Shown: positions 851 to 56,619, counted from the stretch's first letter. The stretch is DNA of 64,000 nucleotides from Octopus sinensis (GCF_006345805.1 NC_043003.1:20770001-20834000); one strand, 5' to 3'. The notes: a model not told the origin generated them from the sequence alone. Program-made: numbers and translations.

Positions 851-938
851 AAAAGGGTAAGCAAACAATGAAAGAATTCTGTTAAAACCTTCACAGGTTC
901 TTGCTAAGAACATCTCTTTACATGGTTTCTCATGTTTT
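851..938 (-). CDS. FAAH: FAAH-like exon 13 ([29 protein letters not shown])
   Basis: TTTTTTTTTCTTCAG acceptor, TTT|GTAAGT donor, phase 2/0 as required. Low sequence similarity (variable membrane-binding region). Confidence 0.75.
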
Positions 939-3900
939 CTGAAGAAAAAAAAGCAAGAAAGAGAGAAATATATAACATTATATAGTACAGTTTTAAAATA
1001 CAACTTACAAACTGGTTAGTTTTTCACTTTACTTTTATCAAACAGAAACTGAAAGAATGTCTTAAACAAGGATGCAGGTAAGGCCACAGCACTGTGAAGC
1101 TAACTTACCTACAGCAAATACCATTTACCAAAACATTAAGGTGACCAATGATTTCTGAGTGAAGCTTGGTAGTCAGAAAATGTGCAGAAGTCATGTGTGC
1201 ACGTATGTACACAGATACACACATGATCATCATCACCACCACCACCACCACCACCACCATCATCACCATCATCACCACCACCACCACCACCATCTTTTAA
1301 GGTTTCATACTAGCATGGGTTGGAAGTTTTGGCAGGATCCACTGGATTCAGAGACTGCACCGTGCTCTAGTATCTACTTCAACATAGCTTCTATGGCTGG
1401 ATGCTTTTCCTAATGCCATCCACCCTATAGAATGTTCCGAGTGCTTTTCACATGCCACCAACACTGGTGAGGTCGCCAAGCATTCTGCAAGACTGTGAAC
1501 CCAAAAGAAGCAAGCAACTTTACACTGGAAGATGAGGTATCAATGTATGAGAGAAGGGACCAGAACAATACAAATTTAGTTGCTGCTGATATAGAAATGC
1601 AGCAACTGAAAAAAATCACTGATGTCGCAGTTAGTCATCAGATTTAAATCTGTCTTAACAAGTGGATACAGCTACTGATGATGCTCAAAGGAGGAGAAAT
1701 ACGTATCTAGCAAAAGCACACCCAATTCTTGATGATTTTCATCTACTACTGATATATTTGTGTGTTTTCTTTAACAATATATGTTTATAAAAGATGCTTG
1801 CTTGGGATGAATACTGCAGTTTTCAGGTTTTGAACAGTATATCTGTTTTAAGTATTATATACAGATTGCTATTTTGCTGCTTCTGTCAGTAACGACCAAT
1901 ATATATATATATATATATAATATAATAATAAGAGTAAATAATTTTTATAAAGGCTTTTAAAAAAAACCCCAATTATTTACTGGTAGAATTCGGTATGTAA
2001 ATATAGCCGATTACCGGCAGGAACTTCTGTAAAGTTCAGTATATATATTGTATATAAGAAAAAGGGACAGGCAAACAGGTTGCTTGACCGCATACCGAAA
2101 AAATAGAAATAGCAGTCAAGAATGCTTATTTCTATCAAAGTTGGACTCCAGGCACGACAAACCCTGTAATTCACATATGCAAAACAGAAGGAATAGATAG
2201 CGAAAACGAAGTCTGGTGGTTATCTGTGAACATCATGTTTCTGGATTATAAACATATTGAATATATATTTCATATATATTTTTGATATATATTTCATATA
2301 CATTGCATATATATTTCACATCCTTCTTCAGCACAGCTTTCCATTGAAAAAGATTTATCATAGATTTATCAAATGCTACGTACCTCAAACCTTCTGACCA
2401 TGCGACATCAAAATATTTGAAGAAAGTGAGCAAAAGCTAAACCTACATAGACATTTGAATTCGTAAATCTTCCCTCCAAAATTTTGCCATGCGCACTACA
2501 AAAATAGTTCCATAAGATTGGGAACTATTGGGTTGTCATAATGGAGTGAAAAATCCAAATAGTAATATAATAATAAGAGTAAATAATTTTTATAAAGGCT
2601 TTTAAAAAAACCCCAATTATTTACTGGTAGAATTCGGTATGTAAAAATAGTTTTTTAAAAGCCTTTATAAAAATTATTTACTCTTATTATTATATTACTA
2701 TTTGGATTTTTCACTCCATTATGACAACCCAATAGTTCCCAATCTTATGGAACTATTTTTGTAGTGCGCATGGCAAAATTTTGGAGGGAAGATTTACGAA
2801 TTCAAACGTCTATGTAGGTTTAGCTTTTGCTCACTTTCTTCAAATATTTTGATGTCGCATGGTCAGAAGGTTTGAGGTACGTAGCATTTGATAAATCTAT
2901 GATAAATCTTTTTCAATGGAAAGCTGTGCTGAAGAAGGATGTGAAATATATATGCAATGTATATGAAATATATATCAAAAATATATATGAAATATATATT
3001 CAATATGTTTATAATCCAGAAACATGATGTTCACAGATAACCACCAGACTTCGTTTTCGCTATCTATTCCTTCTGTTTTGCATATGTGAATTACAGGGTT
3101 TGTCGTGCCTGGAGTCCAACTTTGATAGAAATAAGCATTCTTGACTGCTATTTCTATTTTTTCGGTATGCGGTCAAGCAACCTGTTTGCCTGTCCCTTTT
3201 TCTTATATATATGGACTACACTCACGGAGTGGTTGGCGTTAGGAAGGGCATCCAGCCGTAGAAACACTGCCAGATTTGACTGGGCCTGATGAAGCCTTCT
3301 GGCTTCACAGACCCCAGTAGAACCGTCCAACCCATGCTAACATGGAAAACGGACGCTAAACGACGATGATGATGATGAAGATGATATATATATACACACA
3401 CAATTATGTGCTTTTTCTACAGTATTACAGCATTTTAGCTCTTATTTCTAGCAATATAGGTACTCTGACACCCTTGATCACTTTTAGTGACAATTATATT
3501 TTTCCTTTATAGTAACACATTGCACATGGCTTTTTATATTAATATATATATATATATGTATATGTATACATTTACATGTCTATGTATATCCACACACACA
3601 CACACAAATACACCGATGTAAGTGAAAAGACATGAATAAAATTGAAAAGCAAAAAGGGAAATTTTCCTATTTAGTCATCATGACTACCAGATTCATTATG
3701 ATATTGGCTTATACTGGTGATTGTAAGCAATTACTATGGTTAAAGACAGAACATTTTATGAAGTCTTATGGGTTGACACACAAAGCAAAGTTTCTTGGGA
3801 CAACAGCAAAAGAGATGAGAAAAAATAAGAGTTTTGTGGCCTGATATAAAAGCAATAATATCTTTTAACAAAGAATGAAACAAAGATGAAGTTTGTACTG

Positions 3901-6900
3901 GGGAAAACAGAAATGAAGACTTGGAGCAAAATAACACTGGAGATAAAGTGAGACATGAAGTTAGTGAGAAGTTAGAGAGAAGAAAGGCTGGCAGAGAAGT
4001 GTGTTGAAAAAAAACCAGGAGCAACAGTAAAGTGCTAATGTAGGAGTGGGGGGGGAGAGAGGAAGTGAGTGTGTGTGAGATAGAAAGAGAGAAAACATAA
4101 TAGAGAGGGAAATAAAAGTTTAAATCACCATAGATGGGAAAATCCGTTAAGGTAAACAAAAAGTAGACTTTCTGTTTGGATTATAAATAATTGTAAAAGA
4201 AAAGATTTGGAAAATAATGAAAAGACAAACAAAAATAAAACATGGAAGTACCCCTCATTAACTGCAGATACCAGATTCATGATAGTTTCAACCCTAAACC
4301 TGGAACTACTTGTCTGGCAAATATGAGTGACTGTAAACAATCCATAGAGAGAAAGAGAACATTTAACAATGTCTTATAATTAATTAAACACTCAAAAGAT
4401 ATTCTTTCTCAACAAGCTACAAAGTAGTGATATACTGCACTTAATGAAAACACATTCGGATTAATTCAATACTACTGGATTTCTCTTAAGAAGTTATCTT
4501 TTATGCAAGAAATTAAACTGTTAGCCATTTCTAAAAACCAAGCCAAATCAAACTGGAACCTGGTGCAGCTCTCCGGCTTGCCAGCATGGTGGAGGGACGT
4601 TAAAGGATGATGATGATGGTAATGATGATGATTCTCTCATACTTTTACCCATCTTTTTCCTCTCATAGTCTTGTAAACTGTAAAATGGCATCACTGGTGC
4701 TGGTGGCACAAAAAAACACATCTGCCACATGCTGTAAAGTGGTTGGCAGTGGGAAGGCCATTCTGTTGTAGAAACCATGCCAAAGTAAACATTGGAGCAT
4801 GATGCAGCACTTGGGGCCCCATTAGATACTGTCAAACTATCCAAACCATGCAACCATGAAACATTATTGTTTAAATGTTGATGATGATGATGATGACAAT
4901 GACAGCGATGGTGGAAATGACGGCAACAGCGACAGTGGCAGTGACAGCAATGGTGACAACAACAATGATGACAATGATGATTTGATATATGTGTAGCAGT
5001 CTGATGATGGTGCATGGCTCAGTGGTTAGAGCATCAGGCCCACAATCATGAGGTAGTGAGTTCAATTCCTAGATTGGGCTGTGTGTTGTGTTCTTGAGCA
5101 AGACACTTTATTTCACATTACACCTCTTTACTCAGCTGTATAAATGAGTTGCAATGTCACTGGTGCTAAGTTGTATCAGCCTTTGCCTATCCCTTGGTCA
5201 ACATCAGTGGCACGGAGAGGGAAGACTGGTATGCATGGGTGACAGCTGGTCTTCCACAAAACTACCTTACCCAGATTTGTGCCCCGGAGGGGAGCTTTCT
5301 TGGTGCAATCTCATAGTCATTCATGACCGAAGGGGGTCTTTACCTTTTTAAGCAATTCGATGTCTAATGCACTATACTACAGATACATCCCCGATATTAA
5401 TCATATATTTTGTAATTTAACAGTGTAAAAGCCGCATGTTCAATTCAAGCATTTGAAAGTATTTCTGAACATCAACCATTATCATTAATTTTGATATTAT
5501 TCATTTTTCGTTTTGGGATTTGGTTTGCAAGGTTCTTTATATGAGTTCGTGTGTTGAAGCATATTCTGTTGTGTCTGGGGAGAGTCATTTTCTTTTTGTG
5601 CCTTATAATGTAACACACTCACCGGTAAAATTTCCACTTTTTTTCTTATTTTTATTTTCCTAAAATTTTCGTTGCGTCTTGCAACCTTTTCAATAGTTTT
5701 TGACTCAATAGTCTTGATATTATTCAATTCTTTAATTAATTTGAAAAACATGTAGAAGCCCACCATGGAAGTAAATTCATTCTTGTAACATGTGCGACAG
5801 AACTGCTCAGAATAAATATTTGACCAAAATACGTGTAATGGTGAAGTCAAAATCAACCCCAAGCTTATATTGAATCTGAACCAACCATAGTCTTCAGAAT
5901 TCTAAAAAAAATGTCATGTCTGCCTCTAAGGACAATACAATGTTTTTAGTTTTTACTAGGAGTGCAAAGAGATTGTGTGAACTTCCAGGAAGCAAGGTAG
6001 ATAGCGTGCAAGTGTATTTCTGTGTATGTATGTATGGTTACATGTGTATGTGTGTTAGTGTGTATTACATTAATTATACTAATTCTTTAATTATATTAAT
6101 TACTAGCAGTATCGCCCGGCGTTGCTCGGGTTTGTAAGGGAAATAACTATATAAGCATTTTTAGAGAGTTATAGCCAAAAAATAGCAAAAAAATGCATTA
6201 AAAATGGAAAAAAAAATTATGGTAAATTCTTTTTAAATCGTCGACTCATCGTAGACATTTTTAGAGAGTTATTTCCCTTAGCGAAAAAAATGCATTAAAA
6301 TGGAAAAAATGATGGTAAATTATTTTTTAAATCGTAGACTCATCGTAGACGCGCGCTAATACCCAGAAGGGCTCGATATGAATCACAACTATAAGATACC
6401 CGCTTTTGGTTACACTGCACCGCAAAATGTGGGAGTAGTTAGGAATCTAAATCGTAGGAGACAGACACACAACCTCTCTTTTATATATAAAGATTACTGA
6501 AAATAACCCTCACTAGTTTCTTTATATTCTGTATTTTACTCTATACCAATCATGGGTAAACTGAGTCAGTCAGAAAGTTCCATGGGCCACATACAGCCCA
6601 CAAGACTTTCTTTCTGAATGGCATGCCAATGAAAATTTACTTTGGATTTTTTAGTAGTGCAGCCTAACGATGAGCCATGTCTTACGCAACTCATTTCTTG
6701 AAAAAGATTGCCCATGCCTGGTCTAAACAATACTTACATTATTCTTCTCAGGACATGGCCATCAGACCACAATATATGCATTGTTATACAGAGAGCATCC
6801 AAGATTCTAGGAGGAGTAAATTCAACGACCTGTAAATCAAATGAAACAGCAACATTTATCAGTGATGGATGCTTCATTGCAAGAACAAATAAGAGAGAAC

Positions 6901-9900
6901 TCAATTGTCTCTGGATGTTTGAAAATTGAAGGGAAACATAGAAGATGATGGACATGGAAGATCCTTAGTGAAAAGAGATGGGAAATCAGAAATGTTCAGA
7001 AATTGAGCATCGTCCAAATGTGATGCATGCAACCAATAGAACCCATGTGGAAGTGTTCCAATATTACTAATAAAACTTTATTTCTTTGCCTATGTTTTCC
7101 AATTAACCCTGCTAAGTTATCCTCGTTTTTCATTTCTTTTTGATTTTTTCAAATTGTAAAGGTAATTTATGGACATGCTGTATTATATTTCTACAAGAAG
7201 AAAATCAAAGTCAACTCCATAGCAATGATCCAGAATGTTAGGGAATGAAATTAAATACTGTATGGCCTTTGGCTGTACTTTATCATTTATGCAACTCTAA
7301 CAACTTCTTTATGGTACTAATAATAATTGTTTCTAATTTTGGAACAAGGCCTGAAATTTGTGGTGGGAGGCAGGCAGTTGATTACATTGACTCCAATGCT
7401 CATTTTATTAACCCTGAAAGGATGAAAGGCAAAAAGGCAAAGTTGAGTTTCAACACAAAATGTAAAAAAAAAAAAAAAAAAAAAAAAAAGGATGAAATGC
7501 TAAATGATTCTGCTAGCACACTGCACCACCACTATCACCACCACCACAACCAACCACCACCACCACCACCACTACTACTACTAATAATAATAATAATAAT
7601 CCTTCCTATTACAGGCACAAGGCCTGAAATTTTGGGGAAGGGGACTGGTTGATTACATTGACCCTAGTGCTTGACTAGTACTTATTTTATCAACCCCGAA
7701 AGGATGAAAGGCAAAGTCAACCCCAACAGAATTTGAACTTAGAACATGAAGACAGCTGAAATACCTATTTCTTCACTACCCACCAGGGGCTAAACATAGA
7801 GTGGACAAACAAGGACAAAGGGATTAAGTCAAGTACATCGAACCCAGTACATAACTGGTACTTAATTTATCAACCCCGAAAGGATGAAAGGCAAAGTCAA
7901 CCCCAACAGAATTTGAACTTAGAACATGAAGACAGCTGAAATACCTATTTCTTCACTACCCACCAGGGGCTAAACATAGAGTGGACAAACAAGGACAAAG
8001 GGATTAAGTCAAGTACATCGAACCCAGTACATAACTGGTACTTAATTTATCGACCCCGAAAGGATGAAAGGCAAAGTCGACCTCGGCGGAATTTGAACTC
8101 ACACTGTAACGGCAGACGAAATACTGCTAAGCATTTCACCAGGTGTGCTAATGATTCTGTCAGCTTGCTAGCTTGGGCATGGCTGTGTGGTTAGGGAGCT
8201 TGCTTCCTAGCTACATGGTTTCGGGTTCAGTCCCACTGCGTGGAACTTTGGGTAGGTGTCTTCCACTATAGCCCCGAGCCGACCGGAGCTTTGTGATTGA
8301 ATTCGGTAGGTGGAAGTTACTGCCGTGTGTGTATGTGTGCGTATAGCTGCTCAGTGCCTCTCCGAAAGAGAGAGAGGGAAATAATAATAGTAATAATAAT
8401 GATAATGATGATGATGAATCCAACAAGCCAGGCATTGTTACCAAGGACAGAAGAACAGGATATGTATATTTATTGACATTGCAATACCTTTCAAGAGACA
8501 CCTTCAAGAAAATTACAGAGAAGCTGATTATGTACAATGGCCAGGAAATCAAACTCAACAAGATGAAGAAGATGAAACCTGAAACAATGCCAGTGATCAT
8601 TGGAACACTAAAACTCATTAAGCAGGAGATGGAAAAGGTCATCAATTGCATCCGAGGCAACATCAATATTTATGTAGTCCAGAGGATTGTGCTACTTGGA
8701 ATGGTTCATTGAGGTCAGTCAAGTGACATCAGGCCCATCGTTTGGACCTAGCTCAATAAGATATAGTAAATAGAAAGAATAAACAATGGTTGTTTCTAAT
8801 AAAGGCACAAAGCATGAAATCTTGAAGGGAGAAGTTGCCAAGCTAATTAGATGGCAGGCTAAGTGGGATTTGAACTCAGAACTTGAAGACCTGAAAGAAA
8901 CAACACATGGCATTTTGTCTCATGCTTTAGTAATTCTGCAAGAGCAGCAACAGCAACAACAACATTAACATTCTTACCGTATGGCCTCTGGCTTCCAAAG
9001 CTTTCTTTGCTAAAAGAACTGCTCGCTGGCAGGCAGGAGTGGCATGAACTACATTATCAGTCACATAATATCCAATCCGCAGTTTTCTTGTATCTTCAAA
9101 CAGCTGGAAAGTATCAAGAAAAATTAATTCATTATTAGTATAAGAAATCATTACAGAAAACTACATTAGCTCAGCTGTGTTTTTATTATTATTATTATCT
9201 TGAATTGGCAAGATCATCATCATCATCATCGTTTAATGTCCGCTTTCCATGCTAGCATGGGTTGGACGATTTGACTGAGGTCTGGCGAACCAGATGGCTG
9301 CACCAGACTTCAATCTGATCTGGCAGAGTTTCTACAGCTGGATGCCCTTCCTAACGCCAACCACTCCAAGAGCGTAGTGGGTGCTTTTACGTGCCACCAG
9401 CACAAGGGCCAGTCAGGCGGTACTGGCAACGGCTATGCTCAAATGGTGCTTTTTATGTGCCACCTGCACAGGAGCCAGTCCAGCAGCTCTGGCAATGACC
9501 TCGCTTGAGTGTTTTTTCACGTGCCACCAGCACAAGTACTAGTAAGGCGACACAGGTAACGATCACACTGGGATGGTGTTTTTAACGTGCTATTGGCACG
9601 GAGGCCAGCTTGTTGCTCTGGCAACGATCTCACTCATATCACACTCTTAGTTCATGAAGCCCCCAGTAAGAAAAGATATGTTTGCAAAACTGTCTTATAA
9701 ATTTATTTAGGTAAATTACTTTTAGTTTTTGTTTCTTGTCAGTTTTTTTCCTTGAAATTTGGATGACATATTCTGATATTTCTTTTAGAATTCATCCAAA
9801 GAGTGGTGAATGTTAATTATGTATAATTTTCATTGCTTAGTAACCAAAACAAAAAGAAACAATTCAACATAAAACAAGGGCACTCAGAGAGGGCAATCCT

Positions 9901-17100: not shown

Positions 17101-18297
17101 GAAAGGTAACATGATTTCAAGGTGTTAATGAAAGCTTACGTTAACATAGCCTGTGGTACATTTGTTGTAACAAATGGAATGGCACCAAGCTCTTTCAGGC
17201 ACTGAAATAGAAATTTAGATATTCGATATCAGTTTAGTTGCACAAGACATTAGAAATTAGTTCATAAAGGAAAAACACAAGAAGCAAATCTAATTCATTG
17301 TCTTAAGATGATTTAATACACAATAGATAATATGTAAGTGTGAATGTGTGCATGATTGTGCAGTGTGTGTGTGCGTATTACATACACACATATATATATA
17401 CATACATATACATATACATATATATATATATACATACACATACATATACATATATATACATACACATACATATACATATATATACATACACATACATATA
17501 CATATATATACATACACATACATATACATATATATATATATACATACACATATATATATATATACATACACATATATATATATATACATACACATATATA
17601 TATATATACATACACATATATATATATATACATACACATATATATATATACATACACATATATATATATATACATACACATATATATACATATACATACA
17701 CATATATATACATATACATACACATATATATACATATACATACACATATATATACATATACATACACATATATATACATATACATACACATATATATACA
17801 TATACATACACATATATATACATATACATACACATATATATATATACATACACATATATATATATATACATACACATATATATATATATACATACACATA
17901 TATATATATATACATACACATATATATATATATACATACACATATATATATATATACATACACATATATATATATATACATACACATATATATACATATA
18001 CATACACATATATATATATACATACACATATATATATATACATACACATATATATACATATACATACACATATATATACATATACATACACATATATATA
18101 CATACATATATATATATATACATACACATATATATACATACATATATATATACATACACATATATATACATACATATATATATATATACATACACATATA
18201 TATATACATACACATATATATATATATACATACACATATATATACATACATACACATATATATATATACATACACATATATATACATACATATACAC

Positions 18298-18358
<61 letters not shown>

Positions 18359-18975
18359 CATATACATACATATACATATACATACATATATATACATATA
18401 CATATACATACATATATATACATATACATACATATACATATATATACATACATATACATATATATACATACATATACATATATATACATACATATATATA
18501 TACATATACATTTATACATACATATATATATACATATACATTTATACATACATATATACATATACATTTATACATACATATATACATATACATTTATACA
18601 TACATATATACATATACATTTATACATACATATATACATATACATTTATACATACATATATACATATACATTTATACATACATATATATATACATATACA
18701 TTTATACATACATATATATATACATATACATTTATACATACATATATATACATATACATTTATACATACATATATATACATATACATTTATACATATATA
18801 TATATATATATATACATATACATTTATACATACATATATATATACATATACATTTATACATACATATATATATACATATACATTTATACATACATATATA
18901 TATACATATACATTTATACATACATATATATATACATATACATTTATACATACATATATATATACATATACATTT

Positions 18976-19035
<60 letters not shown>

Positions 19036-22000
19036 GGTGCATCTGTTTTTTGAGGTCATTTGCATTAATTCAGAAAAAAGTGTATAGGTCATCAAAGAAA
19101 AGCTGCATTTGAAAACAAATTGGTACAATTAGTTTTCAGAATCCTTTCATCACATCTATTCAATGAATCCAACATTAGCATAAAACAGTGCTTCAATATG
19201 GGTCTGATGTGGTGACATGCCCCAAAATCAGATGTCCTTTATCATTTCTAGACACAGTGTTGGTTATATCAGACTCGAGAAACTGTGTGGTATTGAAGGT
19301 GTAGATTGACTTCTCTCTTGAATATGCCCCATTTTTAATAGGCCAGTGGATTGAGGTCTGGTGAGCCAGGAGGTCACGTGCCTGGGAATGATCATATAGA
19401 TTGTCACACATCCATACTTGGGTTGTCCAAACCTTATGAGATGGCACAGTCTTGTTGGAAGAAATACAGTGTGCCGGTGGCACATAAAAAGCACCAACCG
19501 ATCGTGGCCGTTGCCAGTCTCCCTTGGCACCTGTGCTGGTGGCATGTAAAAAGCACCCATTACACTCATGGAGTGGTTGGCATTAGGAATGGCATCCAGC
19601 TGTAGAAACACTGCCAGATCAGACTGGAGCCTGGTGCAGCCTTCTGGCTTCCCAGACCCCGGTTGAACCGTCCAACCCATGCTAGCATGGAAAACGGACG
19701 TTAAATGATGATGATGATGATGATGTTGCATTCTATACCTAACCAGACCTCGTAACTGTCTTCAATAGCAATGTCGATTCTTAAGCCCTGTGTAAAAAAG
19801 GGTAAAGGCATGACATCTACCTAATTGCAACAACTGCCAGAACCATCACTCCACATCCCTCAGCATAAAATTGCTCGCCTTTGGGTTTGCAGTCTTGAAA
19901 ACTGCATGAGAACTTCACCAGTGTTGGTGGAACAAAAACAAAAAAAGATGCAATAGAGGCCATATAAAACTTGCTAAAGCAAACACTGGAGCACATTGCA
20001 GCCCTTGGCTCATCAAGTACTGTCATACCAATAGTAGTGGCAGTGGCGATGGCGACGATGATAACAATGATGTTGATTTGCTTTAATCACTTGTCTTTGA
20101 TAATGAGGAAATCCAAGCCTTTTGTTAATATTATCTCATTCTACTATTGCCCGAGGTAGTAATTAACCTAGTTAAATTAATTGCAAATGACTGAAATGTT
20201 TCCTGGATATAAAAATAATACAAACCTTAACGAGATTTGAATCTTCGGTGGCAGGTGGGTACAACAGGCTGGAACCTAACCCCCAAGTCATTCGAAGTCC
20301 CTGAATCAGTGAAAACAAAGGAAGGATGAGTACAATTATGGTGAGAACAGGGTTCAATAACCATAGTAACAAGCATTTTAGTTCATTGTACAACACTAAC
20401 AATCACAATCACATGTCAGAGAGTTTCTATGTGATTGTTTGACCTGCTGGGAAATCTCTATATATATAAAGCTGAAGTTGTCTGTGTATGGCAGGTTTGG
20501 TAGCCTTCAACTAACACTATCTCTTCCGAGACCCTGCAGCGCAAGTTGACCAAAATTGAGAGTATGATAGAAGAAGGCTTGCTCTTCCTTCCGTAGAAGA
20601 TAAAATTCAAATCAGACCATATTAACACCAAAAATTATTTACATCAAAAAGGTGCTTTTTTCTATGAAAATCCCTATTTTTTATGATTTTTTTATTGCTG
20701 TGTCGCCATTTTTCGGTGTATTTCAAGCAGAAAAATGTTCACTTAAAGAGAATAACAAGCTACATAATACAAAATTTTTACTTTTCAAAAATTCCAATTC
20801 TAAAGGGTTGAAACAAACCCTAGCAATGCCGGGCGATACTGCTAGTAGAAGCTAAATCTCCTTCAAATTACACCTTGTTGTCTTAAAAGCTAAGAAATGA
20901 CAAAAGGAATACTGTAATCCTAGATACACTGTGACAGGAGAAAAACAAAAGTAGGAATATCATGAATGGAACTTAGTGATCATAAAATTGCTATTGTTGT
21001 TTAGCTCCTGGTCAGCCTTGATCAAGCAGACTTATGGTCAAAGGCATTCTGGCCATGACCATCTGATACTTTTACATATGAAGAACAACATAGTCAACCC
21101 CATTCTTCTTAATTTAAAATATTAGAGTATAATTTGAGAGTGATTTGTTGGTTACTTCTTGTAGGCTGAGTGACTGCAGAAATTACCTCATTGGTTCATA
21201 TGGTAACATGTACTGCAGTCCAGTGGAGAATGTAGCAATGAAAATAACCAGCTTTTAACCCAGGGATGAGGAAATTTTTTTCTCTCTTTTCTTCTATTCT
21301 TTCCTCTCCAATCCCACAATCCTCATTATGCTCATACATTATAGGCAATGACTGAGTAGACCTTTTCCAGAACAGCTCTCATTGCAGTTACCAAATATAA
21401 CTGGTATTAACAGCCTTGATAACGACTATTGGGACATCTACTTAGCCATTGTCAGTTCTTGAATGCTATTACCAACTATTATCTATGTTGGTTATAGGCC
21501 TACCTGTCCATACAAGCAAACTGTAGATTGAACAATGTACTCCCATGGAACTGAGTTGTCTTAGAAAAGAGATTAAGATTCACTTCACAGTTGTATTGTA
21601 GCAGTCACTAAACGAAGAAAAGTTACTAAAAATTAACTTTCAAATAAAAACCAACCTTGTGGAATATGGTTTCTTTCAGACTAATTGGAATTCCATGGAG
21701 AGGTTTGGTCACAGATGGTTGAGCATCACATTTCAGTGCTAATTCCTGAGTAAAAAACAAATAAGATCATTAATACTTATTTTGCATTTAAACTATGATC
21801 TCTGATAGATCAAGGAAATGTTTATTGTATCATCATTGCTATATAAGTTAAAATCTAGAACTGAGGAAATTGTAGGTCTGTGTCAGTAAAAAATAATTCA
21901 TGAAGGAGTATAAAAATTTAAATAAATGTGGTTACTACGAAGAGAGAAAGAGATCTGTACTTTCAGATTAAGGGTCTTTAATGAAGAAAGGAGGGTTCTG

Positions 22001-22990: not shown

Positions 22991-25900
22991 AACAGTCATT
23001 TACAACACTCATTCAAAGCACACACACACAATGTCAAGACAAAGAAGACCAATGGTCACATACTCACTTTCAAACACACATACATATATACATCACAGGC
23101 ACAAAATACAGATGAAGAAAGAACTGTAGACACAAACAGTACAGGTAAGACTGGAAACAAACACAGGAATCTAGAGAACACTGTATGGCATAATACATAG
23201 CATATACATTGTGGTCTGCTTAGAAAACAAACACAGAATAGATCATGTCTCCTTACCTCAGCATCAGGAATTATAGCAACAATGCAGTTGATTTTCTCTT
23301 GAGCTTCAAGTGCCTACAGCAGAAAAATCAGAGATTATTAATGCTAAATATAGGTTCATAACATTGGCAAAAGGAAGGTTGTTTTGAGTGGTTAGGTACA
23401 ATCGCTTAACAAACCTTCAGTATAAATGCAATATACCTTTTTACTTGTTTCAGTCATTTGACTGTGGCTGGCCAAGATGGAGCATAGCCTTTAGTTGAGC
23501 AAATCGACCCCAGGACTTATTCTTTGTAAGCCTAGTACCTACTATCTGTCTCTTTTGTCGAACAGCTAGGTTACGGGGACGTAAACACACCAGCATCAAT
23601 TGTCAAGCGATGTTGGTGGGACAAACACAGACACACAAACATATACACACATAAATATATATATATACATATATACAAAGGGCATTTTTCAGTTCCCGTC
23701 TACCAAATCCACTCACAAATCTTTGGTCGGCACAAGGCTCTAGTAGAAGACACTTGACTAAGGCGCCACGCAGTGGGACTGAACCCAGAACCATGCGGTT
23801 CATAAGCAAGCTACTTACCACACATCCACTCCTATGCCTATATGCTGATTTTTGTTCATAACTTTTCTCAGTTTGGTCAGAATTTGATTCTTGTAAATTA
23901 TAAACAGACAAGCTTGGCTGTGTGGTAAGAGGCTTTCTTCCTAACCACATAGTACTGGGTTCAGTCTCGCTGTGTAGCACCTTGGGCAAGTGTCTTCTAC
24001 TATGGCCTCAGGCCAACCAGCGCCATGTGAGTGGATTTGGTAGATGGAAATTAGAAGAAGCCCGTCATATATATGCTTCGGTGAATTTTAGTCAAAGGAA
24101 TCAAAGCCACTATATATTTTCTTTGTAAAGCCTGATAGCTATTCTGTCGATCTCTTTTGCCAATTACTAAGTTACAGGGACATAAACACACCAACACCAG
24201 TTGTCAAGTGGTGATGGGGGACAAACACAGACCAGACACAAAGACACACACACATATTTATATATGTGTCTGCATGTATACATATATACATACATTCCAT
24301 CCTGTGCCTGTGAAATCTTGTATCCCTGCCGTAAGGCTTTACTTCCACACACGCCTGCTTAATTTAATTCTTCCTTGGTCGAAAGACACCTCTTGTTATG
24401 TACTGTTATTTGTATTTGTGTAACATTCTTTGTTTTTTTCCTGCCATTTTTTCGTATACATTCCATGCTTTCTTCCAAGGAATCAAATGCTCTTAGCTTA
24501 GTTTTTCCTTGGGGTTGACCAGATTGGAGCAATCTCGAGTATAACCAGCTGAAATTGCAAAGATAATCTGGAACTCGACTGAGAAAAGAAAACTCCAAAT
24601 GACCTGTCCTTGTTTTCTTTGTATTGCCTATCTGAATGCTTTGTTGTCCCATTTTTGTATCACCTAACTGTCTGAATGTTTTGCAGTCTTGTCCATTTTG
24701 CATTTATATATATATATACATATACACATAGACACAAACACACTTGATAGGTTTCTTTCAGTTTCCATCTACCAAATCTACTCACAAGGCTTTGGTCAGC
24801 CTGAGGCTATAGTAGAAGACACTTTCCCAAGATTCTATGCAGTGAGACTGATCCTGGAACCATGTGATTAGGAAGGAAACTTCTTACCACACGGCCAGGC
24901 TTGCTCTTCCTTCCGTAGAAGAAAAAATTCAAATCGGATCATGTTAACAGCAAAAATTATTTACATTAAAAAGGTGCTTTTTTTCTATGAAAATTCCTAT
25001 TTTTTATGGGTTTTTTACTGTGGTGTCGCCATTTTTCGGTGTATTTCAACCAGAAAAATGTCACTTAAAGAGAATAACAAGCTATATAATGCAAAATTTT
25101 TACTTTTCAAAAATTCTAATTCTAAAGGGTCAAAACAAACCTGAACAACGCCGGGTGATACTGCTAGTAGTGAAAAAATTTTGAGTGGATATATTCAGGG
25201 AGTTAAAAACCAATTAATGAATGGCTTTAAAAAAAAAACACAACATAAAATAAATAAAAATTAAACAACCTTGAACTGATAAGCACGAAGGACATCAATG
25301 GCTTTTAATGAGCGATCTTTGAGAAACTTCTGCAGATTGACAATATCCAGTGATAGAATTTTGTTCCTCATCTCTAAAGTCAGCTGAAAGAGAAGAACAG
25401 AAGGAAAATTAAATCTTGTATGGAAAAGAGTGAAAAATAAGAAATGAATTCCTTAATATTTCAAATATTGTTTTGTTTCCACCTTGAATTATGAATTTGA
25501 TTCTTGACTCACTACGGAATTTGCTTCCTAGCCACATGCTTTCAGGTTCAATCTCACAGTGTGGCACCTTAGACAAGTATCCTCTGCTACAGCCCCAGGC
25601 CAACCAAAACCTTGTCGATTGGCTTTGGTAGATGAAAAATGAAAGAAGCTCATCATATATATCTCTCTCTATATAAACGGCAGTTTGTCTGTGCGTGTTT
25701 CTGTGTGTCTGTTTTCTCGTACCCTCACCCTGACCACGGCTTTCAACCGATTCTGATGAACTTGACACACACATAGCCCAATGTCATAATTCAAAACTAA
25801 CGCAGCGAAAATTTTGAAAAGTTCCCCCAGTTCTGAAAAAATCGATAAATTCGACATGGGGTCGAGAATAAAAAAAAACAAACCCCAGACTGTCTAGGGG

Positions 25901-28900
25901 ACGCAACTCAACCTTTTTTTACTCTCAAAAAAAAATTTACCATCATTTTTTTTCCATTTTTTTGCTATTTTTTGGCTATAACTCTCTAAAAATGCTTTAT
26001 AGTTATTTCCCTTACAAACCTGAGCAACGCCGGGCGATACTGCTAGTTTAATATATATGTGTGTGAAGGCAAATGGTTTGGTGGTTAGAGTGTCAGACTC
26101 ACAATCATGACGTAGTGAACTCAATTCCCCAACCAGGCTGTGTATGGTGTTCTTGAGCAAGACACTTTATTCCACATTGCTCCAGTTCACTCAGCTGTAG
26201 AAATGAGTTGCAACATCACTGGTGCCAAGCTGTATCGACCTTTGCCTTTCTCTAGGATAACACTGGTGGTGTGGAGAGGAGAGACTGCTATGCATGGGTG
26301 ACAGCTGGTCTGCCACAAACAACCTTGCCCAGACTTGTGCCTCGGAGGGGAATTTTCTAGGTGCAATCCCATGGTCATTCATGACCAAAGGAGGTCTTTT
26401 ACTTTTTATATGAGTGTGTGTGTGTGTGTGTACACATGCACGTATGTGATGCTTTGCTTTGACTGTACATGATAGTTGTAAACAAATGTTACCATCATGC
26501 AAGCAGTGTCCTCCATTCATCTTCCATGAAGACATGTCTGGTTAAGGGAATTATTACCTTCCTTGGAAGCCAGTTGAGGAATGACAACAGGTAGGGCATG
26601 TGGCTGTAGAACATCTGCCTCAACAAAATTCTGACTGACCCATTCAAGCATGGAAAAGTGAATGCTATGACGATGATGATGATGATGATGATGACAATGG
26701 TGAAGATGATAATGACGATAAGCAACGTTATGGTAGGGTCAACTAAGTATTTTTTATAAAATTCTGCCCTTTTATTTGCTAGAAGAGAGCTTAATTTGAG
26801 TTGCCATTAAATTTGAGTCACCATTAAATGTAAACCATTAAATCTTTCACCAGTTCCCTTTCTCTTTAGCACTTTCATCATGAGCCATTTTCTCTCTTTT
26901 CAGTGAATCAACAAGAGAATCGCTATGCAGTCATTTAACCTGATAGAAGCAGTAGCCAAATTTTCTTCAAATCACACTCTACAATCTTGCCTTTATAACC
27001 CCTAAAATATCTATATGCAGAAACAATTATTTGTTGCTTTTTGTAAGCTTATTTAACACTAGGTAAACTTATCATCATCACCATCATCCTTGTTTAACGT
27101 CTGCCTTCCATGCTGACATGGGTTGGATGGTTTGACAGGAGCCGGTGCAGGCAGAAGACTGCATCAGACTTCTGTGTCTGTTTTGGCATGGTTTTTGCAG
27201 CTGGATTCTCCTCCTAACACCAACCACCCCACAGAGTGAACTGAGTACTTTTTATGTGGCACCAGCCCAGGCAAGGTCAGTTTTGGCATGATCTTTACAG
27301 CTAGATGCCTTTTCCAAATGCCAACCACTTCACAGCATGGACTGGATGCTTTTTACATAGCACCAGCACTGGCAGGGTCACCAAGTAACTTTCAAGACAA
27401 AGATCTTTTCAGAGGGGTGGTGGCATTGCAGGAGCTGATCTTGTATCACCTGATGAAAGGTTAGAGTGTGACAGAGAGAGACAGACAGAAGCAGGTGTCT
27501 TAATATAAACTGCTTGATATGACTACATTTTATTACACACACACACACACACATATGCATATAATACCAAAATATCAATAATCATGCAAAACCTACCAGG
27601 TATTATAATCCCTTACACATAAGTGGCGCAGGAGTGGCTGTGTGGTAAGTAGCTTGCCTACCAACCACATGGTTCCGGGTTCAGTCCCACTGCGTGGCAC
27701 CTTGGGCAAGTGTCTTCTACTATAGCCTCGGGCCGACCAAAGCCTTGTGAGTGGATTTGATAGACGGAAACTGAAAGAAGCCCGTCGTATATATGTATAT
27801 ATATATGTGTGTGTGTGTGTGTGCGTGTATGTTTGTGTGTCTGTGTCTGTCCATCTAGCATTGCTTGACAACCGATGCTGGTGTGTTTATGTCCCCGTCA
27901 CTTAGCGGTTCGGCAAAAAGAGACCGATAGAATAAGTACTGGGCTTACAAAAAGAATAAGTCCCGGGGTCGAGTTGCTCGATTAAAGGCGGTGCTCCAGC
28001 ATGGCCACAGTCAAATGACTGAAACAAGTAAAAGAGTATAATAATGTTTAAATGTAAAAAGTCCTTAGAGCTCATCCAACTTTTCTATTTCATCATTTTC
28101 TTTCCACAACAACAAAGTATTAGAAGCATCAAGGATTATAAATAATAAGTGTTATAGGATTAAACAGAAATTAATGCACTGGACAATATAATCCCTGATA
28201 TACAAAAGCACAACAGTGACTTCTCATTTCCTGTGCTAATAACCTATTACATGAAACAAGGGATGTGTTCAATAACTCACTTTAGTACAGGAGTCACAAA
28301 ACATTAAACATTCATCTCTCCCCAAACACAACATATTTTAACTTGACTCTTATAAAATAACTAGTTTGGTTTAGGAAGCCTTTGAGAATTGCAAATCAAC
28401 AATTTTAGAATGTAGATATGACTTCTCTACAAATATCTCATCAGTTACTATTAATGTTTCTTAACTGTCATTTTATTTTAAACTAGATTAAAAGCCACAC
28501 TTTTAAACCAGCTCCAGTGGAAGGCTAATTAGACCCAAAACTGAAAAGAGCTAAATTATCATGACTATAATACATCTATAATGGCTATATGCCCCAGTGG
28601 TGTTTGATCAGAAGTTATGGATGGATGAGAATTAATTCTGTAATGCTATCATTCTATTATTCCAGTCTAAATTTGAATTCCAACTGTTGGCTAATTTGTC
28701 CCAAAGTTCTTATCTCGACGTAAAATTAATAAAGCGAATGTCATTTATTTCCCCCCTTGATCTCTGACATCATCTGACAAATGCCACCAAGATGGTGTGA
28801 ATCAGCCAAGCTTTACCTGCTAGAAATAGCAACCCAAATGCTTTTAATTCAGATCTCAATGCTGCATGTTCAAGAACCAAATAAACAGATTTTCAATCCC

Positions 28901-31900
28901 AGGATCATTCTGATTCTGGAAAATGGATGTTAAATGATGATGATGATGATGACGATGACAATAACAAGAATGATGGGAGAGAAAAAAGAAAAGCAAATAA
29001 GAGTAAAGGAAAAATCTATCTTTCTTCACTCAGCTGATCATTGGAACATACTGGAAGATTTCATTTATTTCCTGATCAAAGACATTCCGGCTGTGACCAA
29101 CCCAACATTTATGTTCTTTCAGTAACATTAAATCTTGCATTGTTTTATTTGATTATTCAATAAGAAAGACAGAGAAAAGAGATGTGAGAGAAAAATAAAT
29201 ACAGAAAATTATATTTCAAATACTTACACCTGAATTCTGTAGCCTTTGTTTTAGACATTTCAGCTGTTCTGCACGTTTAGAGCGGGCATCTCTCATAGCT
29301 CTTTTGACCTTTAGGTGCATGCGTACTCTGTTGAATATAGTGAACAGAATGGCAGAACCTGACACAAATAGGATTGCATAAATGCTTGGTTCTAGATAAG
29401 TCTGCACCTCTTCGGGTATATAGAGATCATAGTATTTCTGAAGTGCGTCTCCCATCTTTCCCTGGAAATAAAGACATATGTTAACTCTTTAGTAGATAGA
29501 TTACTCGGTCAAATGTAATGTTTATTTATTCACATCATTTTGAACAAATCCTGTATTATCTCATAGCTTCATAGTCTCAATGATATGATAATGTATTTTT
29601 GGAATAACATTTTGGAAATAAAAATTTCCACAAAAATCAAATGAAAATTGTAGTTAAGATACCCGTGCTGGTGGCACGTAAAAAGCACATCCGAGCATGG
29701 TTGATGTCAGCTCCGCCTGACTGACATCTGTGTCGGTGACACATAAAAAGTACCAACCGATTGTGGCCGTTTGCCAGCCACCTCTGGCCCCTGTGCCGGT
29801 GGCTTGTAAAATGCACCCACTACACTCACGGAGTGATTAGCATTAAGAAGGGCATCCAGTTGTAGAAACAGTGCCAGATCAGACTGCAGCCTGGCGCAGC
29901 CTCCTGGCTTCCCAGACCCCGGTCGAGCCATCCAATCCCTGCTAGCAATGGAAAACGGACGTTAAACGATGATGACGATGATTGTAGGGTACATATGAGA
30001 TGCCAGTTATAACCAGTTTGAACATAAAATAAGTAGAATATTTGGGCCGGATTTGGCCGATTTAAATGCTAAAGGGTTAATAAAAACAAGATTGAATGTG
30101 ATACAAGCTTAACAAAATATTTTACACAATATCAATTCCAAGCCTTCCATGCTAGCATGGGTTGGACAGTTTTGACAGATGCTAACCAGGCAGAAGACTG
30201 TACCAGACTTTTGTCTGTTTTGGGCATGGTTTTTATGGCAAGATGCCCCTCCAAACTCCAAGCACCTCAGAGTGGACAGAGTGCTTTTTATATGGCACCA
30301 GCACAGGCGAGGACAGTTTTGGCTTAGATTTTGCAGCAGGATGCCCTTCTTAACAACAACCACTTTACAGTGTGGACTGGGTGCTTTTTATGTAGCACCA
30401 CCTTTCCACACACCAACCAGCTTGCAGAGTGGACTGAATGTTTGTATGTGGCACCAGCACAGACGAGGTCAGTTTTGGCATGGTTTTTACTGCTTGATGC
30501 CCTTCCAAATGCCAACCACTTTACAGTGTGGACTGGATGCTCTTTACATGAGACTATGTACATAAATCATTGTATGGTTAAAAAGTTCACTTCACAACCA
30601 CGAGATTTCAAGTTCAGTTCCATTCTGAAGTATCTTGGGTATGTGCCTTCTTCAATGGCCTTGTGCTGACCAATGTCTTGTAAGTGGAAATTGAGATTGG
30701 AACTGTATGTAAACTCAACCTGTGTGTATGTGTGCATTGTGTTCTTGTATATGTTTGTGTGTGTAATGTGTGTGTGTATATAGTGTGTGTATGTGTTCGT
30801 GTGTGTGTGTATGTGTGTGTGTATGTGCATGCATGCATGTGTAATGTTTGTAGTGTGTGTGCATGTGCATACAAATGTGCATGTATGTAGACATTATGAT
30901 CAGTCCCTCCTTCTGCACTCCCAAGGAGCAGCAGAATAAAACAAAACAATCCCTTACTTGAAAAACAGGTTAAATGTTGATGTCAGGAAGGGCATCCAGC
31001 CATAAAAATGCTGCAACAAATAAGTGCCCACCCAACCAATGCTAGCATGGAAAAGAGCATATCAAACAAATGAACAAACAAACAAAACAAATATATTCTT
31101 TTACTGGTTTTAAAAGAATGGACTACCTTCAAGGATTTTAGTCAATTATATTGATCACTTTTACCATAGGCATATCACCCAAAGATGAAGACAAGACAAC
31201 AATGCTATCATGTTGAGGAACAGAGCTAGCTTTGGACAATCAATGAGGGATCTTTACCTTTTGACCTACAGATTTAAAAAATAATTTTTTGTAACTAAAC
31301 ACTTTCAAACTTCGGACACTGGTAGAATGTGTCATATAAAACATGTTTTACTCTTAGCATTTTTGAGAAAAACTTATATTTATGAAGTAATTTCACCTTA
31401 AAGTTCTCATATTTCGGTAATTTCAACCAATCAATGACGTGTATTCAACTGAATAAAATTACTGCTGTTGTTTGCCAACAAGAACTTCCAGCGATGTATA
31501 TTTCATCCACAGACCAAATCCTGCACCTGGTGCAAAGTCCCATCCAGACCTAGGGTGATGTGGTGGTGGAGCGATGCTGTAGACAAGGCCATTAGAGCAA
31601 AGAAACAGGCCTGGAAGGACTGGAAGCTTTGGGGTAGCAGGGAATTTATCAGATAGTCAGAAAGGAAGCTAGGAAACAGGTGTATCTAGTCAGGGGAGAA
31701 ATAGAAAAGAAGTTTTCCTATGTTCAGCAATGTGAGGACCAGAGACTTGAAGTGTTTCAGATTGCAAGACAGTGTGTGAGAGAAAATCATGATGTCATAG
31801 GAGAAAAATGTATCTGCTTGAATGGTGGTGCACTTGCATTTAATGATTCTGCAAAGGAAGGAGCTTGGAAATGTCATTATGAAAAGCTGCTAAACGTGGA

Positions 31901-38842: not shown

Positions 38843-38901
<59 letters not shown>

Positions 38902-39770
38902 TACGACGGGCTTCTTTCAGTTTCCGTCTACCAAGTCAACTCACAAGGCTTTGGTCGGCCCGAGGCTATAGTAGAAGACACTTGCCCAAGGTGCCGCGCA
39001 GTGGGACTAAACCCGGAACCATGTGGTTGGTAAGCAAGCTACTTTATTTCATAAAACTTGCAGACACTGTTGCAACCGAAATCTGGGGCTCCAATGGAGA
39101 ATTCTGAAACTCTCGTTTTTACACGAATCAATTATCATATTGCATTGCTTTCTTTCCAGCACCAGAGCAGCCACCTGCGAAGGCCACTCTGGGCTTTCAA
39201 TGCAATTCGCCTCCCTCAGGATCCGACTGTCCATTTCATTTTCGACAAAACAGTCGATAGCCCCTCCCTTGAGCTAGCAGAACATACATTCTTCACCACC
39301 TTCACTGGGAGGGGGCCCTCAACTCCCTCACTCGGTGGCACACATCCCACTGGCGAGGTCATATTTTTCCCACCCCTCCGGTGGCACACATCCCACCGAA
39401 GGGGTTTCGGAACATGCCGTCCCCGGCAATGCCCCGTTTTTCTTTTTCTTGTTCTTTTTTCCTTTTACGACGGGAGAGTGGAGTTCCTCCAACATCTCCG
39501 AAGAACCCTCCCTCGCTACCGCCGTCTCAGGATCCATGGGTGGGCAACCATTGTTGTCCCCCTTACAGCCACTCCTGCGCCTATAAATGTAGATAACGTA
39601 CACAATGTCACATTTTAAACTTGAGAAAAGTCTCGGATAGTTTTACTGATCCACTGAAAATCTAAGCTTCTCCAGACTGATAGATAAACAGGTTAGTGTT
39701 TGCTTTAACACCCGGCCACTGAAGCAAAACCGAAAAAGTGTAAAAGGTGTAACAAAAAAAAAAAAGTGGG

Positions 39771-54959: not shown

Positions 54960-55756
54960 ATTTAATCATAATGTATATACTCTATAGCTAGGACAGTTAC
55001 TGTGGTATTTGTCCTGAGATAATATCTCTAATGGACATGCCGTGTTAAAAGCATAATGAATATCAGAAGGAGACAAAAATTCATCCCATTAGTGACCAGT
55101 GAAAATGCCAGATGCATTTTGGGCCTTTTGGGGCCTTTTCAATGGTGCATACTTGCAGCTAGCCCCAAGCTCTGGTGATAGTTTGTCCCCTCTGATATGG
55201 GTATGGATGTGTTGTCATCTTCATCATCATCATATTAACATCCACTTTCCCATGCTTGCATGAGTCAGATGGAGTTTATTTAGGTAGGAATTTTATGACA
55301 GGACATGTCTTCACCAAATATTTGAAATGATATTTGTATCAATGTGACACTCATTTACAACTCTCACACAATACAAAGCAACACATACATACACACATGC
55401 ATGCATACTTGCACATATACATATTATGGAGGTATAAGGATATGTAACACACTGCCTAAATACCAATCTTGAGAAATTAGGCCTCTCAAAACCAGAAAAG
55501 AGAAAACTAATTCGAAGACTACAGAACAAATCCATTACTGGAATTGTAAAAATCTGTAAAACTTTCCAGAATTTTCTCATTTAAATATATATAGGCACAG
55601 GAGCGGCTCTGTGGTAAGTAGCTTGCTTACCAACCACATGGTTCCTGGTTCATTCCCACTGCATGGCACCTTGGGCAAGTGTCTTCTACTATAGTCTCAG
55701 GCTGACCAAAGCCTTGTGAGTGGATTTGGTAGGTGGAAACTGAAAGAAGCCCGTTG

Positions 55757-55815
<59 letters not shown>

Positions 55816-56585: not shown

Positions 56586-56619
<34 letters not shown>

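What the first reader, a model, noticed from the sequence alone, without database searches (positions are those of the whole stretch)
1919..3209. 559-bp near-perfect hairpin preceded by a direct terminal repeat, inside FAAH intron 12
Seen: X(1919-2001)-Y-Z-X(2564-2645), then an inverted copy. Arms are 2051-2609 and 2651-3209 with a 41-nt loop; one mismatch found by eye (2453/2807). It is TA-flanked. The X-Y-Z-X layout (~645-nt period) is what reverse transcription of a circular or terminally redundant RNA followed by foldback would give. A weak hammerhead-like string, CTGAAGA aggatgt GAAATATA, lies near 2930-2950 but has no proper stem II. Inference: a very young PLE/retrozyme-like or foldback insertion. 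In the FAAH pre-mRNA it would form a long dsRNA, an ideal ADAR substrate in a lineage known for extensive A-to-I editing, and might affect splicing of the 5.8-kb intron.
Basis: partly seen in the sequence, partly recalled or inferred. Interest (0 to 1): 0.7.

Follow-up and report, generated by a model that had tools for sequence, protein, structure and literature searches.

The report
Near-perfect 1.2-kb intronic palindrome
A 559-bp stretch of an intron of a fatty-acid amide hydrolase (FAAH)-like gene has been copied in reverse right next to itself; it looks like an ordinary local DNA-repair or replication accident, not a mobile element or ribozyme, and it matters mainly because the gene's transcript should fold there into a very long double-stranded RNA.

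Summary
Arms 2051-2609 and 2651-3209 are 559 nt each, with one mismatch (2453/2807) and a 41-nt loop. An 88/89-nt direct repeat (1918-2006, 2563-2650) lies 645 nt upstream. The structure sits in a 5,799-nt intron of a minus-strand FAAH-like gene, and I confirmed both flanking exons.

No hammerhead ribozyme, tRNA, Rfam family, protein domain or target-site duplication beyond a palindromic TA was found. No second copy occurs in the 64-kb window. The layout is a-b-s-Y-a-b-a'-Y'. The right arm is an inverted copy of the 559 nt that end 41 nt upstream of it. Its outer end lies in a TA tract next to an older, 5'-truncated SINE.

Best explanation, at about 0.5: a recent local fold-back (snap-back or template-switch) inverted duplication with a 41-nt spacer. 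Rivals are:
- a low-copy foldback/MITE-like transposon;
- an assembly artefact;
- an older palindrome kept uniform by arm-to-arm gene conversion.

The retrozyme/PLE reading is not supported. The predicted consequence, a 559-bp intronic dsRNA stem (-974 kcal/mol) that ADAR could edit, is a sound inference but untested. No reads, other genomes or RNA data were reachable. Interest is modest.

The parts
1899..1917 (.). (TA)n microsatellite directly left of the complex
   Evidence: TRF period 2, 13.5 copies over 1899-1924; sequence
1918..2006 (+). X1: upstream copy of the 88/89-nt direct repeat (segments a + b)
   Evidence: blastn 1918-2006 vs 2563-2650, 97.75% over 89 columns; D6/D11 and I4
2007..2050 (+). 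s: 44-nt single-copy spacer between X1 and the left arm
   Evidence: No match elsewhere in the window; sequence
2051..2609 (+). Left arm (Y 2051-2562 plus a 2563-2609); inferred template of the inverted copy
   Evidence: I1; one mismatch in 559. X1 is contiguous across the arm/loop border, so left arm + loop is the original configuration (inference)
2563..2650 (+). X2: second copy of the direct repeat, spanning the inner 47 nt of the left arm (a) and the whole loop (b)
2610..2650 (+). 41-nt loop/spacer (segment b); genomic sequence, also present in X1, not a sequencing adapter
2651..3209 (-). Right arm: inverted copy (a'Y') of 2051-2609
2453..2453 (.). The single arm-to-arm mismatch (A here, C at 2807); U-G wobble in the minus-strand RNA
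   Evidence: stem is uninterrupted in the fold
2254..2318 (.). Degenerate 11/24-nt AT-rich tandem repeat inside the arm; mirrored at 2942-3006 and identical between arms
   Evidence: D1
3215..3385 (+). 5'-truncated SINE-like repeat with (GAT)n tail, starting 5 nt after the right arm; not part of the palindrome but marks its outer junction
   Evidence: Alignments A1 and A2: three other window copies extend at least ~130 nt further 5'. It is 84-90% identical to those copies, so not young. The missing head is not found left of the complex
939..6737 (-). The 5,799-nt intron that holds the whole structure (GT at 6737-6736, AG at 940-939)
6738..6829 (-). Upstream exon ([30 protein letters not shown])
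   Evidence: tblastn with mollusc and vertebrate FAAH fragments; spliced alignment to FAAH
851..938 (-). Downstream exon ([29 protein letters not shown])

Best explanation
This is a recent, local, inverted duplication of pre-existing intronic DNA made by fold-back synthesis. The intron already carried the order a-b-s-Y-a-b, that is, an 88-nt direct repeat 645 nt apart whose own origin is unresolved. A break or collapsed fork occurred just right of 2650, in or near a TA tract upstream of an old SINE. The 3' end turned back on its own or its sister strand and left 41 nt unpaired. It copied 2609 back to 2051, and the new strand was rejoined to the right-hand end inside TATATA microhomology, possibly with loss of intervening DNA. 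The product is a 1,159-bp quasi-palindrome with a 41-nt spacer. It has no evident dedicated function. In the minus-strand FAAH-like pre-mRNA it should fold into a 559-bp perfect duplex, which is a likely ADAR hyper-editing target, and be removed with the intron. At the DNA level the 41-nt spacer should make it much less breakage-prone than a spacerless palindrome. Shown here: the anatomy, the near-identity of the arms, the lack of mobile-element or ribozyme hallmarks, the intron context and the predicted fold. Inferred: the mechanism, the order of events, and editing.
For: 1) The arms are 558/559 identical, while every other repeat in the window is 82-95% identical. Even the slippage-prone internal tandem repeat is identical between arms.
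2) The geometry is that of a fold-back event. The inverted copy starts 41 nt after the end of its template, as in the fold-back model with a single-copy spacer (PMC3907307). It also matches the yeast break-repair foldbacks, which by coincidence also had a 41-nt loop and whose far end was captured by end joining with 0-5 bp of microhomology (PMC11724301).
3) X1 is contiguous across the arm/loop border, so left arm + loop is the original and the right arm the copy.
4) The outer junction lies in TATATA, which is self-complementary and so offers microhomology on either strand.
5) GC content (31%) equals that of the neighbouring intron.
6) No hammerhead or other Rfam family, no tRNA and no Pfam domain were found, nothing related turned up in the protein collection, and there is no TSD of 3, 4, 6 or 8 bp (flanks read).
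7) The adjacent SINE is as diverged as the other copies (84-90%), so it predates the arm duplication and is not its cause.
8) The loop is genomic sequence, and the contig returns to gene-collinear sequence after 559 nt, with exons on both sides in order. A single chimeric read would not produce that.
Against: No microhomology is visible at the inner junction: 2650/2610 and their neighbours do not pair. Any priming inverted repeat would now be hidden inside the arms. Reported break-repair foldbacks of this type are mostly under 150 bp and constitutional ones are kilobases to megabases, so 559 bp lies between the documented ranges. The 88-nt direct repeat is not explained by the model. The ancestral empty site could not be seen because no reads, second assembly or related species were reachable. 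Near-identity of the arms could also come from gene conversion rather than youth.
Confidence: 0.5

Rival explanations
1. It is a copy of a non-autonomous foldback/MITE-like DNA transposon with very long terminal inverted repeats (element about 2053-3207, TA target duplication). X1 would be a fragment of a neighbouring copy.
For: It is a compact hairpin-shaped unit with a short loop. TA sits at both outer ends. There is a short internal tandem-repeat block in each arm. Absence from a 64-kb window says little, since a 1,000-copy family in a genome of gigabase size would be expected about 0.02 times per window.
Against: TA is palindromic and is part of a TA tract, so it is not evidence of a TSD. 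No 3-, 4-, 6- or 8-bp TSD exists. No other copy or fragment occurs in the window apart from X1. X1 equals exactly a+b and has neither Y on its left nor a' on its right, which is not what a second element copy would look like. There is no transposase remnant. The tandem block is only about 65 of 559 nt, unlike Drosophila FB arms (from my own knowledge of that family).
Confidence: 0.2
2. It is an assembly or library artefact (a foldback chimera fixed in the consensus) and the real intron lacks the right arm.
For: Perfect palindromes are a known failure mode of long-read libraries (general knowledge). The single mismatch could be a polishing error. Nothing in the window can prove physical existence.
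Against: The loop is genomic sequence that also occurs in X1, not an adapter. After 559 nt the sequence returns to the forward, gene-collinear path with correctly ordered exons on both sides. That needs two switches, not one chimeric join. There are no Ns and no other anomaly nearby.
Confidence: 0.12
3. It is an older palindrome whose arms are kept nearly identical by arm-to-arm gene conversion, so it is not young.
For: Closely spaced inverted repeats are known to homogenise, as in the primate Y-chromosome palindromes (my own knowledge). The adjacent SINE junction and the 2 differences in 88 nt between X1 and X2 show that the neighbourhood is not new.
Against: There is no direct evidence for it. 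The identical microsatellite-like tracts inside the arms are more simply explained by recency.
Confidence: 0.1
4. One reading: it is the reverse-transcribed product of a circular or terminally redundant RNA (retrozyme or Penelope-like element) followed by foldback.
For: The a-b-s-Y-a-b order (1.14 units of 645 nt) is what rolling-circle copying of a 645-nt circle would give.
Against: No hammerhead at E <= 10 in Rfam. The candidate core has one helix-II pair. No RT or GIY-YIG remnant and no other copies. The facing ends of the direct and inverted parts differ by 41 nt.
Confidence: 0.04

Closest known systems
Fold-back inverted duplications with a single-copy spacer (Hermetz et al. 2014, PMC3907307; yeast break-repair foldbacks, PMC11724301)
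   Same: Inverted copy lies adjacent to its template. An unpaired spacer lies between the arms (41 nt here; also 41 nt in the yeast MAT case). The far junction has little microhomology. Loss of distal sequence is possible.
   Different: The size, 559 bp, lies between the yeast events (mostly under 150 bp) and the human ones (kilobases to megabases). The event is interstitial, with return to the original strand. The short priming inverted repeat at the spacer border cannot be seen.
Human palindromic AT-rich repeats (PATRR11/17/22; PMC1851657)
   Same: Several-hundred-bp, AT-rich, near-perfect palindromes in non-coding DNA that can adopt hairpin or cruciform structures.
   Different: As far as I recall, PATRRs have essentially no spacer. 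Their total length is about 190-600 bp, whereas here each arm alone is 559 bp and the loop is 41 nt. In yeast, spacers of 9 bp or more sharply reduce breakage (PMC8053094). No rearrangement role is known here.
Intronic inverted repeat pairs as ADAR substrates (inverted Alus in primates; repeat-derived dsRNA across Metazoa, PMC9989829)
   Same: Intramolecular dsRNA forms in a pre-mRNA from nearby inverted copies; this is the main class of A-to-I hyper-editing target.
   Different: The pair here is a unique, perfect duplication rather than two diverged copies of a dispersed repeat, and its duplex is far longer and cleaner than is typical. Editing was not tested.
Drosophila hairpin-RNA (hpRNA) loci
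   Same: Long, young inverted duplications that are transcribed into hairpins.
   Different: hpRNA arms derive from target genes and are diced into endo-siRNAs. Here the arm has no detectable genic origin, and molluscs showed no dedicated endo-siRNA pathway (PMC12479628).
Foldback (FB) elements and long-TIR MITEs
   Same: Hairpin-shaped, non-coding, and flanked by TA.
   Different: No copies, no verifiable TSD, and arms not built from tandem subrepeats.
Retrozymes and Penelope-like elements
   Same: A partial tandem layout combined with an inverted part.
   Different: No hammerhead ribozyme, no RT, and no dispersed copies.

Membership tests
Fold-back inverted duplication | Inverted copy directly adjacent to its template with a single-copy spacer between them | tested here: met
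   Arms 2051-2609 and 2651-3209, spacer 2610-2650
Fold-back inverted duplication | Short inverted microhomology at the spacer/duplication border that primed the fold-back | tested here: inconclusive
   No pairing between 2610-2629 and 2631-2650 next to the junction. A pre-existing inverted repeat would now be indistinguishable from the inner ends of the arms (TTTTAAAAAA / TTTTTTAAAA).
Fold-back inverted duplication | Derived state relative to an ancestral allele that lacks the inverted copy | not testable with these tools
   No reads, second assembly or related species could be retrieved
Hammerhead-bearing retrozyme / Penelope-like element | Hammerhead ribozyme core (CUGANGA, helix II, GAAA, with three helices) | tested here: not met
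   No Rfam hammerhead at E <= 10 and none at gathering score in the window. The only core-like string has one helix-II pair.
Hammerhead-bearing retrozyme / Penelope-like element | RT/GIY-YIG coding remnant (PLE), or dispersed tandem copies (retrozyme) | tested here: not met
   No Pfam hit in any arm ORF, nothing related in the protein collection, and no further copies in 64 kb. The genome-wide copy number is not testable here.
Foldback / MITE-type DNA transposon | Target-site duplication flanking the terminal inverted repeats | tested here: inconclusive
   Only a palindromic TA inside a TA tract. There is no 3-, 4-, 6- or 8-bp duplication: the flanks are ...ATATATTG | element | TATGGACT....
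Foldback / MITE-type DNA transposon | Multiple dispersed copies with the same termini | not testable with these tools
   None in the 64-kb window and none in the metagenome scan. The host genome itself is not in any searchable collection.
LTR-type / TRIM retroelement (for the X1...X2 direct repeats) | TG...CA repeat termini, a tRNA primer-binding site after the 5' repeat, and a TSD | tested here: not met
   X starts TAAT and ends ATAG. The sequence after X1 is CCGATTACCGG, and no tRNA-like match was found.
FAAH (amidase-signature) gene, host of the intron | Amidase signature and collinear similarity to FAAH across exons | tested here: met
   GGSSGGE exon at 16066-15851. Best database hits are FAAH1-like with PF01425. 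The spliced exons flanking the intron align to rat FAAH structures at E = 1.3e-10.
ADAR hyper-editing substrate | Long, nearly perfect intramolecular dsRNA in a transcribed region | tested here: met
   The minus-strand RNA folds into one 559-bp stem, MFE -974 kcal/mol, inside a confirmed intron.
ADAR hyper-editing substrate | Observed A-to-G clusters in RNA relative to DNA | not testable with these tools
   No RNA-seq access

The most novel reading that the evidence does not exclude
The palindrome is a real, lineage-specific (possibly still polymorphic) structural allele whose 559-bp intronic dsRNA is heavily edited or otherwise sensed. It would then measurably alter splicing, nuclear retention or the level of the FAAH-like transcript. 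That would be a naturally arising cis-acting dsRNA switch in an endocannabinoid-hydrolase gene of an animal with unusually active ADAR editing.
Probability: 0.06. Interest if true: 0.6.

Novelty: new member of a known kind. Interest (0 to 1): 0.3.

Why it matters
If the palindrome is physically real, it is a clean natural example of an interstitial fold-back duplication of intermediate size (559 bp, 41-nt spacer) with both junctions readable. It is also a convenient positive control for hyper-editing pipelines, because it offers a perfect 559-bp duplex inside a defined intron. It also marks a site that short-read mapping and PCR will handle badly. It does not appear to be a new kind of genetic element, and nothing indicates an effect on the encoded protein.

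Tried and rejected
- **Retrozyme/PLE:** rejected after the Rfam scans and an explicit hammerhead core scan.
- **LTR/TRIM reading of X1...X2:** rejected because there is no TG..CA, primer-binding site or tRNA match.
- **Insertion into an intact SINE:** rejected because the missing SINE head is not on the other side of the complex.
- **SINE retrotransposition creating the hairpin by template jump:** considered and set aside. The SINE copy is 84-90% identical to its relatives, so it is old, while the arms are 99.8% identical.
- **Coding or gene-derived arm (hpRNA-like):** no Pfam hit and nothing related in the protein collection.
- **Finding the same locus or family elsewhere:**
  - protein search with one exon found nothing;
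  - a 207-aa multi-exon query found only distant FAAH fragments, at most about 44-50% identity over most of the query (up to 62% on short partial hits), with no close relative of the source organism;
  - an exact 22-mer scan of metagenome contigs gave 0 matches;
  - exact look-ups of 20 ORFs in and around the structure were all absent.
- **Three-frame intron translation submitted to Pfam:** The exons were instead found by tblastn. The result was then confirmed against PDB FAAH chains.

Full report
**1. The observation**

The repeat finder reports inverted arms 2051-2609 and 2651-3209, each 559 nt, with 41 nt between them. A base-by-base comparison finds exactly one mismatch, 2453 A opposite 2807 C. 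The pairing cannot be extended by a single base outward (2050/3210) or inward (2610/2650).

I name the segments as follows:
- a = the first 47 nt of the repeat
- b = the remaining 41 nt
- s = 2007-2050
- Y = 2051-2562

With those names the locus reads a-b-s-Y-a-b-a'-Y'. Segment a is identical in its three copies (1918-1964, 2563-2609 and, inverted, 2651-2697; I4). The only X1/X2 differences are an A8 against A7 run at the a/b border and one substitution (2002 T / 2646 A). Both fall in b, which is the loop.

Self-comparison of the whole window shows that every other repeat pair is 82-95% identical. The arms are therefore by far the most similar duplicated DNA present. No other copy of a, b, s or Y occurs in the 64 kb.

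**2. Context**

The window carries a FAAH-like gene on the minus strand.
- One exon (9103-8978) matches rat FAAH structures at E = 2.6e-7.
- The amidase-signature exon (GGSSGGE) lies at 16066-15851.
- The best database relatives are FAAH1-like proteins with PF01425, led by a snail protein at 44% identity.

The two exons that bracket the palindrome are 6829-6738 and 938-851, with canonical AG/GT signals. The peptide spliced from three consecutive exons aligns in a single stretch to FAAH, chain residues 289-394, at E = 1.3e-10.

The complex lies 3,528 nt from the donor and 979 nt from the acceptor. I could not confirm the number 12. My partial exon map is compatible with it.

**3. What it is not**

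*Ribozyme or retroelement.* Rfam finds no hammerhead or any other ribozyme in 1500-3700 even at E <= 10. The only hits are sub-threshold plant and animal miRNA-precursor models, which score on any long perfect stem. Nothing in the whole window reaches a gathering score. No tRNA-like sequence is present. The repeat does not have TG..CA ends and is not followed by a primer-binding site.

*Coding content.* All arm ORFs are short and have no Pfam match. Nothing related was found in the large protein collection.

*Transposon insertion.* No target-site duplication of 3, 4, 6 or 8 bp flanks either 2051-3209 or 1918-3209. The 'TA' at the ends is palindromic and embedded in TA tracts, so it carries no information. 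GC content (31%) is that of the surrounding intron.

**4. The right junction**

Five bases after the right arm begins a SINE-like repeat (3215-3385, with a (GAT)n tail). Three other copies in the window extend at least ~130 nt further 5' (alignments A1 and A2), so this copy is 5'-truncated at the junction. Its missing head is not found to the left of the complex, so the complex is not a simple insertion into a whole SINE.

The copy is 84-90% identical to its relatives, like the other copies are to each other. It is therefore old relative to the arms. Either the SINE inserted already truncated into a TA tract and that tract later broke, or the rearrangement removed the SINE head. I cannot tell which.

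**5. Most likely origin**

X1 is contiguous across what is now the arm/loop border. The left arm plus loop is therefore the original sequence, and the right arm is the derived copy.

The right arm is an inverted copy of the 559 nt that end 41 nt upstream of where the copy starts. Its far end lands in TATATA, which reads the same on both strands. This is the signature of fold-back (snap-back or template-switch) synthesis:
- a 3' end at a break or collapsed fork turns back, leaving a loop;
- it copies its own or its sister strand;
- the new strand is captured by the other end with little microhomology.

The same logic explains large human inverted duplications with a single-copy spacer (PMC3907307). 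It also explains short inverted insertions at yeast breaks, where the loop happened also to be 41 nt and capture was by end joining with 0-5 bp of microhomology (PMC11724301).

The model has weak points:
- No priming microhomology is visible at the inner junction.
- The size, 559 bp, lies between the documented ranges.
- The older 88-nt direct repeat is unexplained. It could be a remnant of a 645-bp tandem duplication, or part of the same multi-switch event with error-prone synthesis near the junctions.
- The ancestral allele was not available.

I put this explanation at about 0.5.

**6. Rivals**

- *A low-copy foldback/MITE-like transposon (0.2).* This cannot be excluded, because absence from 64 kb is nearly uninformative and the host genome was not searchable.
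- *An assembly artefact (0.12).* The loop is genomic, not adapter sequence. The contig also returns after 559 nt to the collinear gene path, which needs two switches. Only reads can settle it.
- *An older palindrome homogenised by arm-to-arm conversion (0.1).* This would change the age, not the nature.
- *The retrozyme/PLE model (0.04).* It fails its defining test.

**7. What it does**

Nothing suggests a dedicated function. Folded as minus-strand RNA, 2040-3220 gives one uninterrupted stem with MFE -974 kcal/mol, and the single mismatch becomes a G-U pair. Nearby inverted repeats that form intramolecular dsRNA are the conventional source of long ADAR substrates across animals (PMC9989829), so hyper-editing of this intron segment is a reasonable prediction.

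Dicing into siRNAs is less likely. A mollusc-wide small-RNA survey, which sampled one octopus, found no dedicated endo-siRNA pathway and suggested that editing may 'melt' such dsRNA (PMC12479628).

At the DNA level, yeast data show that breakage and fork stalling at inverted repeats fall steeply once the spacer reaches 9 bp or more (PMC8053094). A 41-nt loop should therefore allow the structure to persist.

**8. Limits**

Every attempt to reach the same locus in another data set failed. The evidence shows only a FAAH-like gene, whose best-scoring database hit is a gastropod FAAH-like protein at 44% identity, closely followed by vertebrate and nematode FAAH fragments. Physical reality, age, copy number and editing therefore all remain untested. 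The tests are listed under decisive next steps.

**9. Verdict**

This is a new instance of a known kind of rearrangement. Its interest is modest unless it proves to be polymorphic with an effect on the transcript.

Noticed in passing
window 3215-3385(+), 1290-1470(-), 9214-9540(-), 19400-19723(+), 29650-29982(+), 27071-27400(-), 4738-4896(+): A SINE-like family with core GGAGTGGTTGGCGTTAGGAAGGGCATCCAGCTGTAGAAAC, an internally repeated CTGTGCTGGTGGCACGTAAAAAGCACC head and a (GAT)n tail. Copies are 83-90% identical and several are 5'-truncated. Two of them (1290-1470 minus, 3215-3385 plus) form an inverted pair that brackets the palindrome.
   Followed up: partly
window 23433-23843, 27618-28044, 35584-35988, 37555-37987, 43056-43473, 55584-56032, 57060-57480, 60827-61296: A second, roughly 420-nt interspersed repeat family in both orientations, 82-92% identical, often next to (TA)n/(TG)n tracts. 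It is the most abundant repeat in the window.
   Followed up: no
window 7654-8099: A tandem duplication with a 180-nt period (7654-7919 vs 7834-8099, 94.7%) in the preceding FAAH-like intron. It translates as repeated SINE-like ORFs.
   Followed up: no
window 47581-48057 and 48718-49190: A direct repeat of about 475 nt at 92.5% identity, 1.1 kb apart. After the palindrome arms it is the best-scoring repeat pair in the window (a shorter 176-nt pair, 37780-37955 vs 38869-39044, is 95.5% identical).
   Followed up: no
window 17390-19030: A 1.6-kb block of TA-rich short tandem repeats. The spacing of self-hits suggests units of about 22 nt in one part and about 30 nt in another. It lies upstream, in transcript terms, of exon 17204-17139, in the intron that ends at that exon.
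   Followed up: no
window 56173-56697(-) and 62761-63264(-): ORFs of 175 and 168 aa that are artefacts of compound microsatellites (an ATGTATGTATGC-type unit and a CACACA/TGTG-type unit). They are not genes.
   Followed up: no
window 25386-25267, 23313-23197, 21763-21635, 17204-17139, 16066-15851, 11629-11501, 9103-8978, 6829-6738, 938-851 (all minus strand): Partial exon map of the FAAH-like gene. The gene spans more than 25 kb of the window and runs off its low-coordinate end, so its 3' exons and stop codon are outside the window. Exons for about rat residues 149-171 and 263-275 were not located.
   Followed up: partly
protein searches: The large protein collection returned only FAAH fragments of 360 aa or less, at 33-62% identity. 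No full-length FAAH came back, not even a vertebrate one. Either the word index favours short entries or relatives of the source organism are absent. Negative results should be read with that in mind.
   Followed up: no
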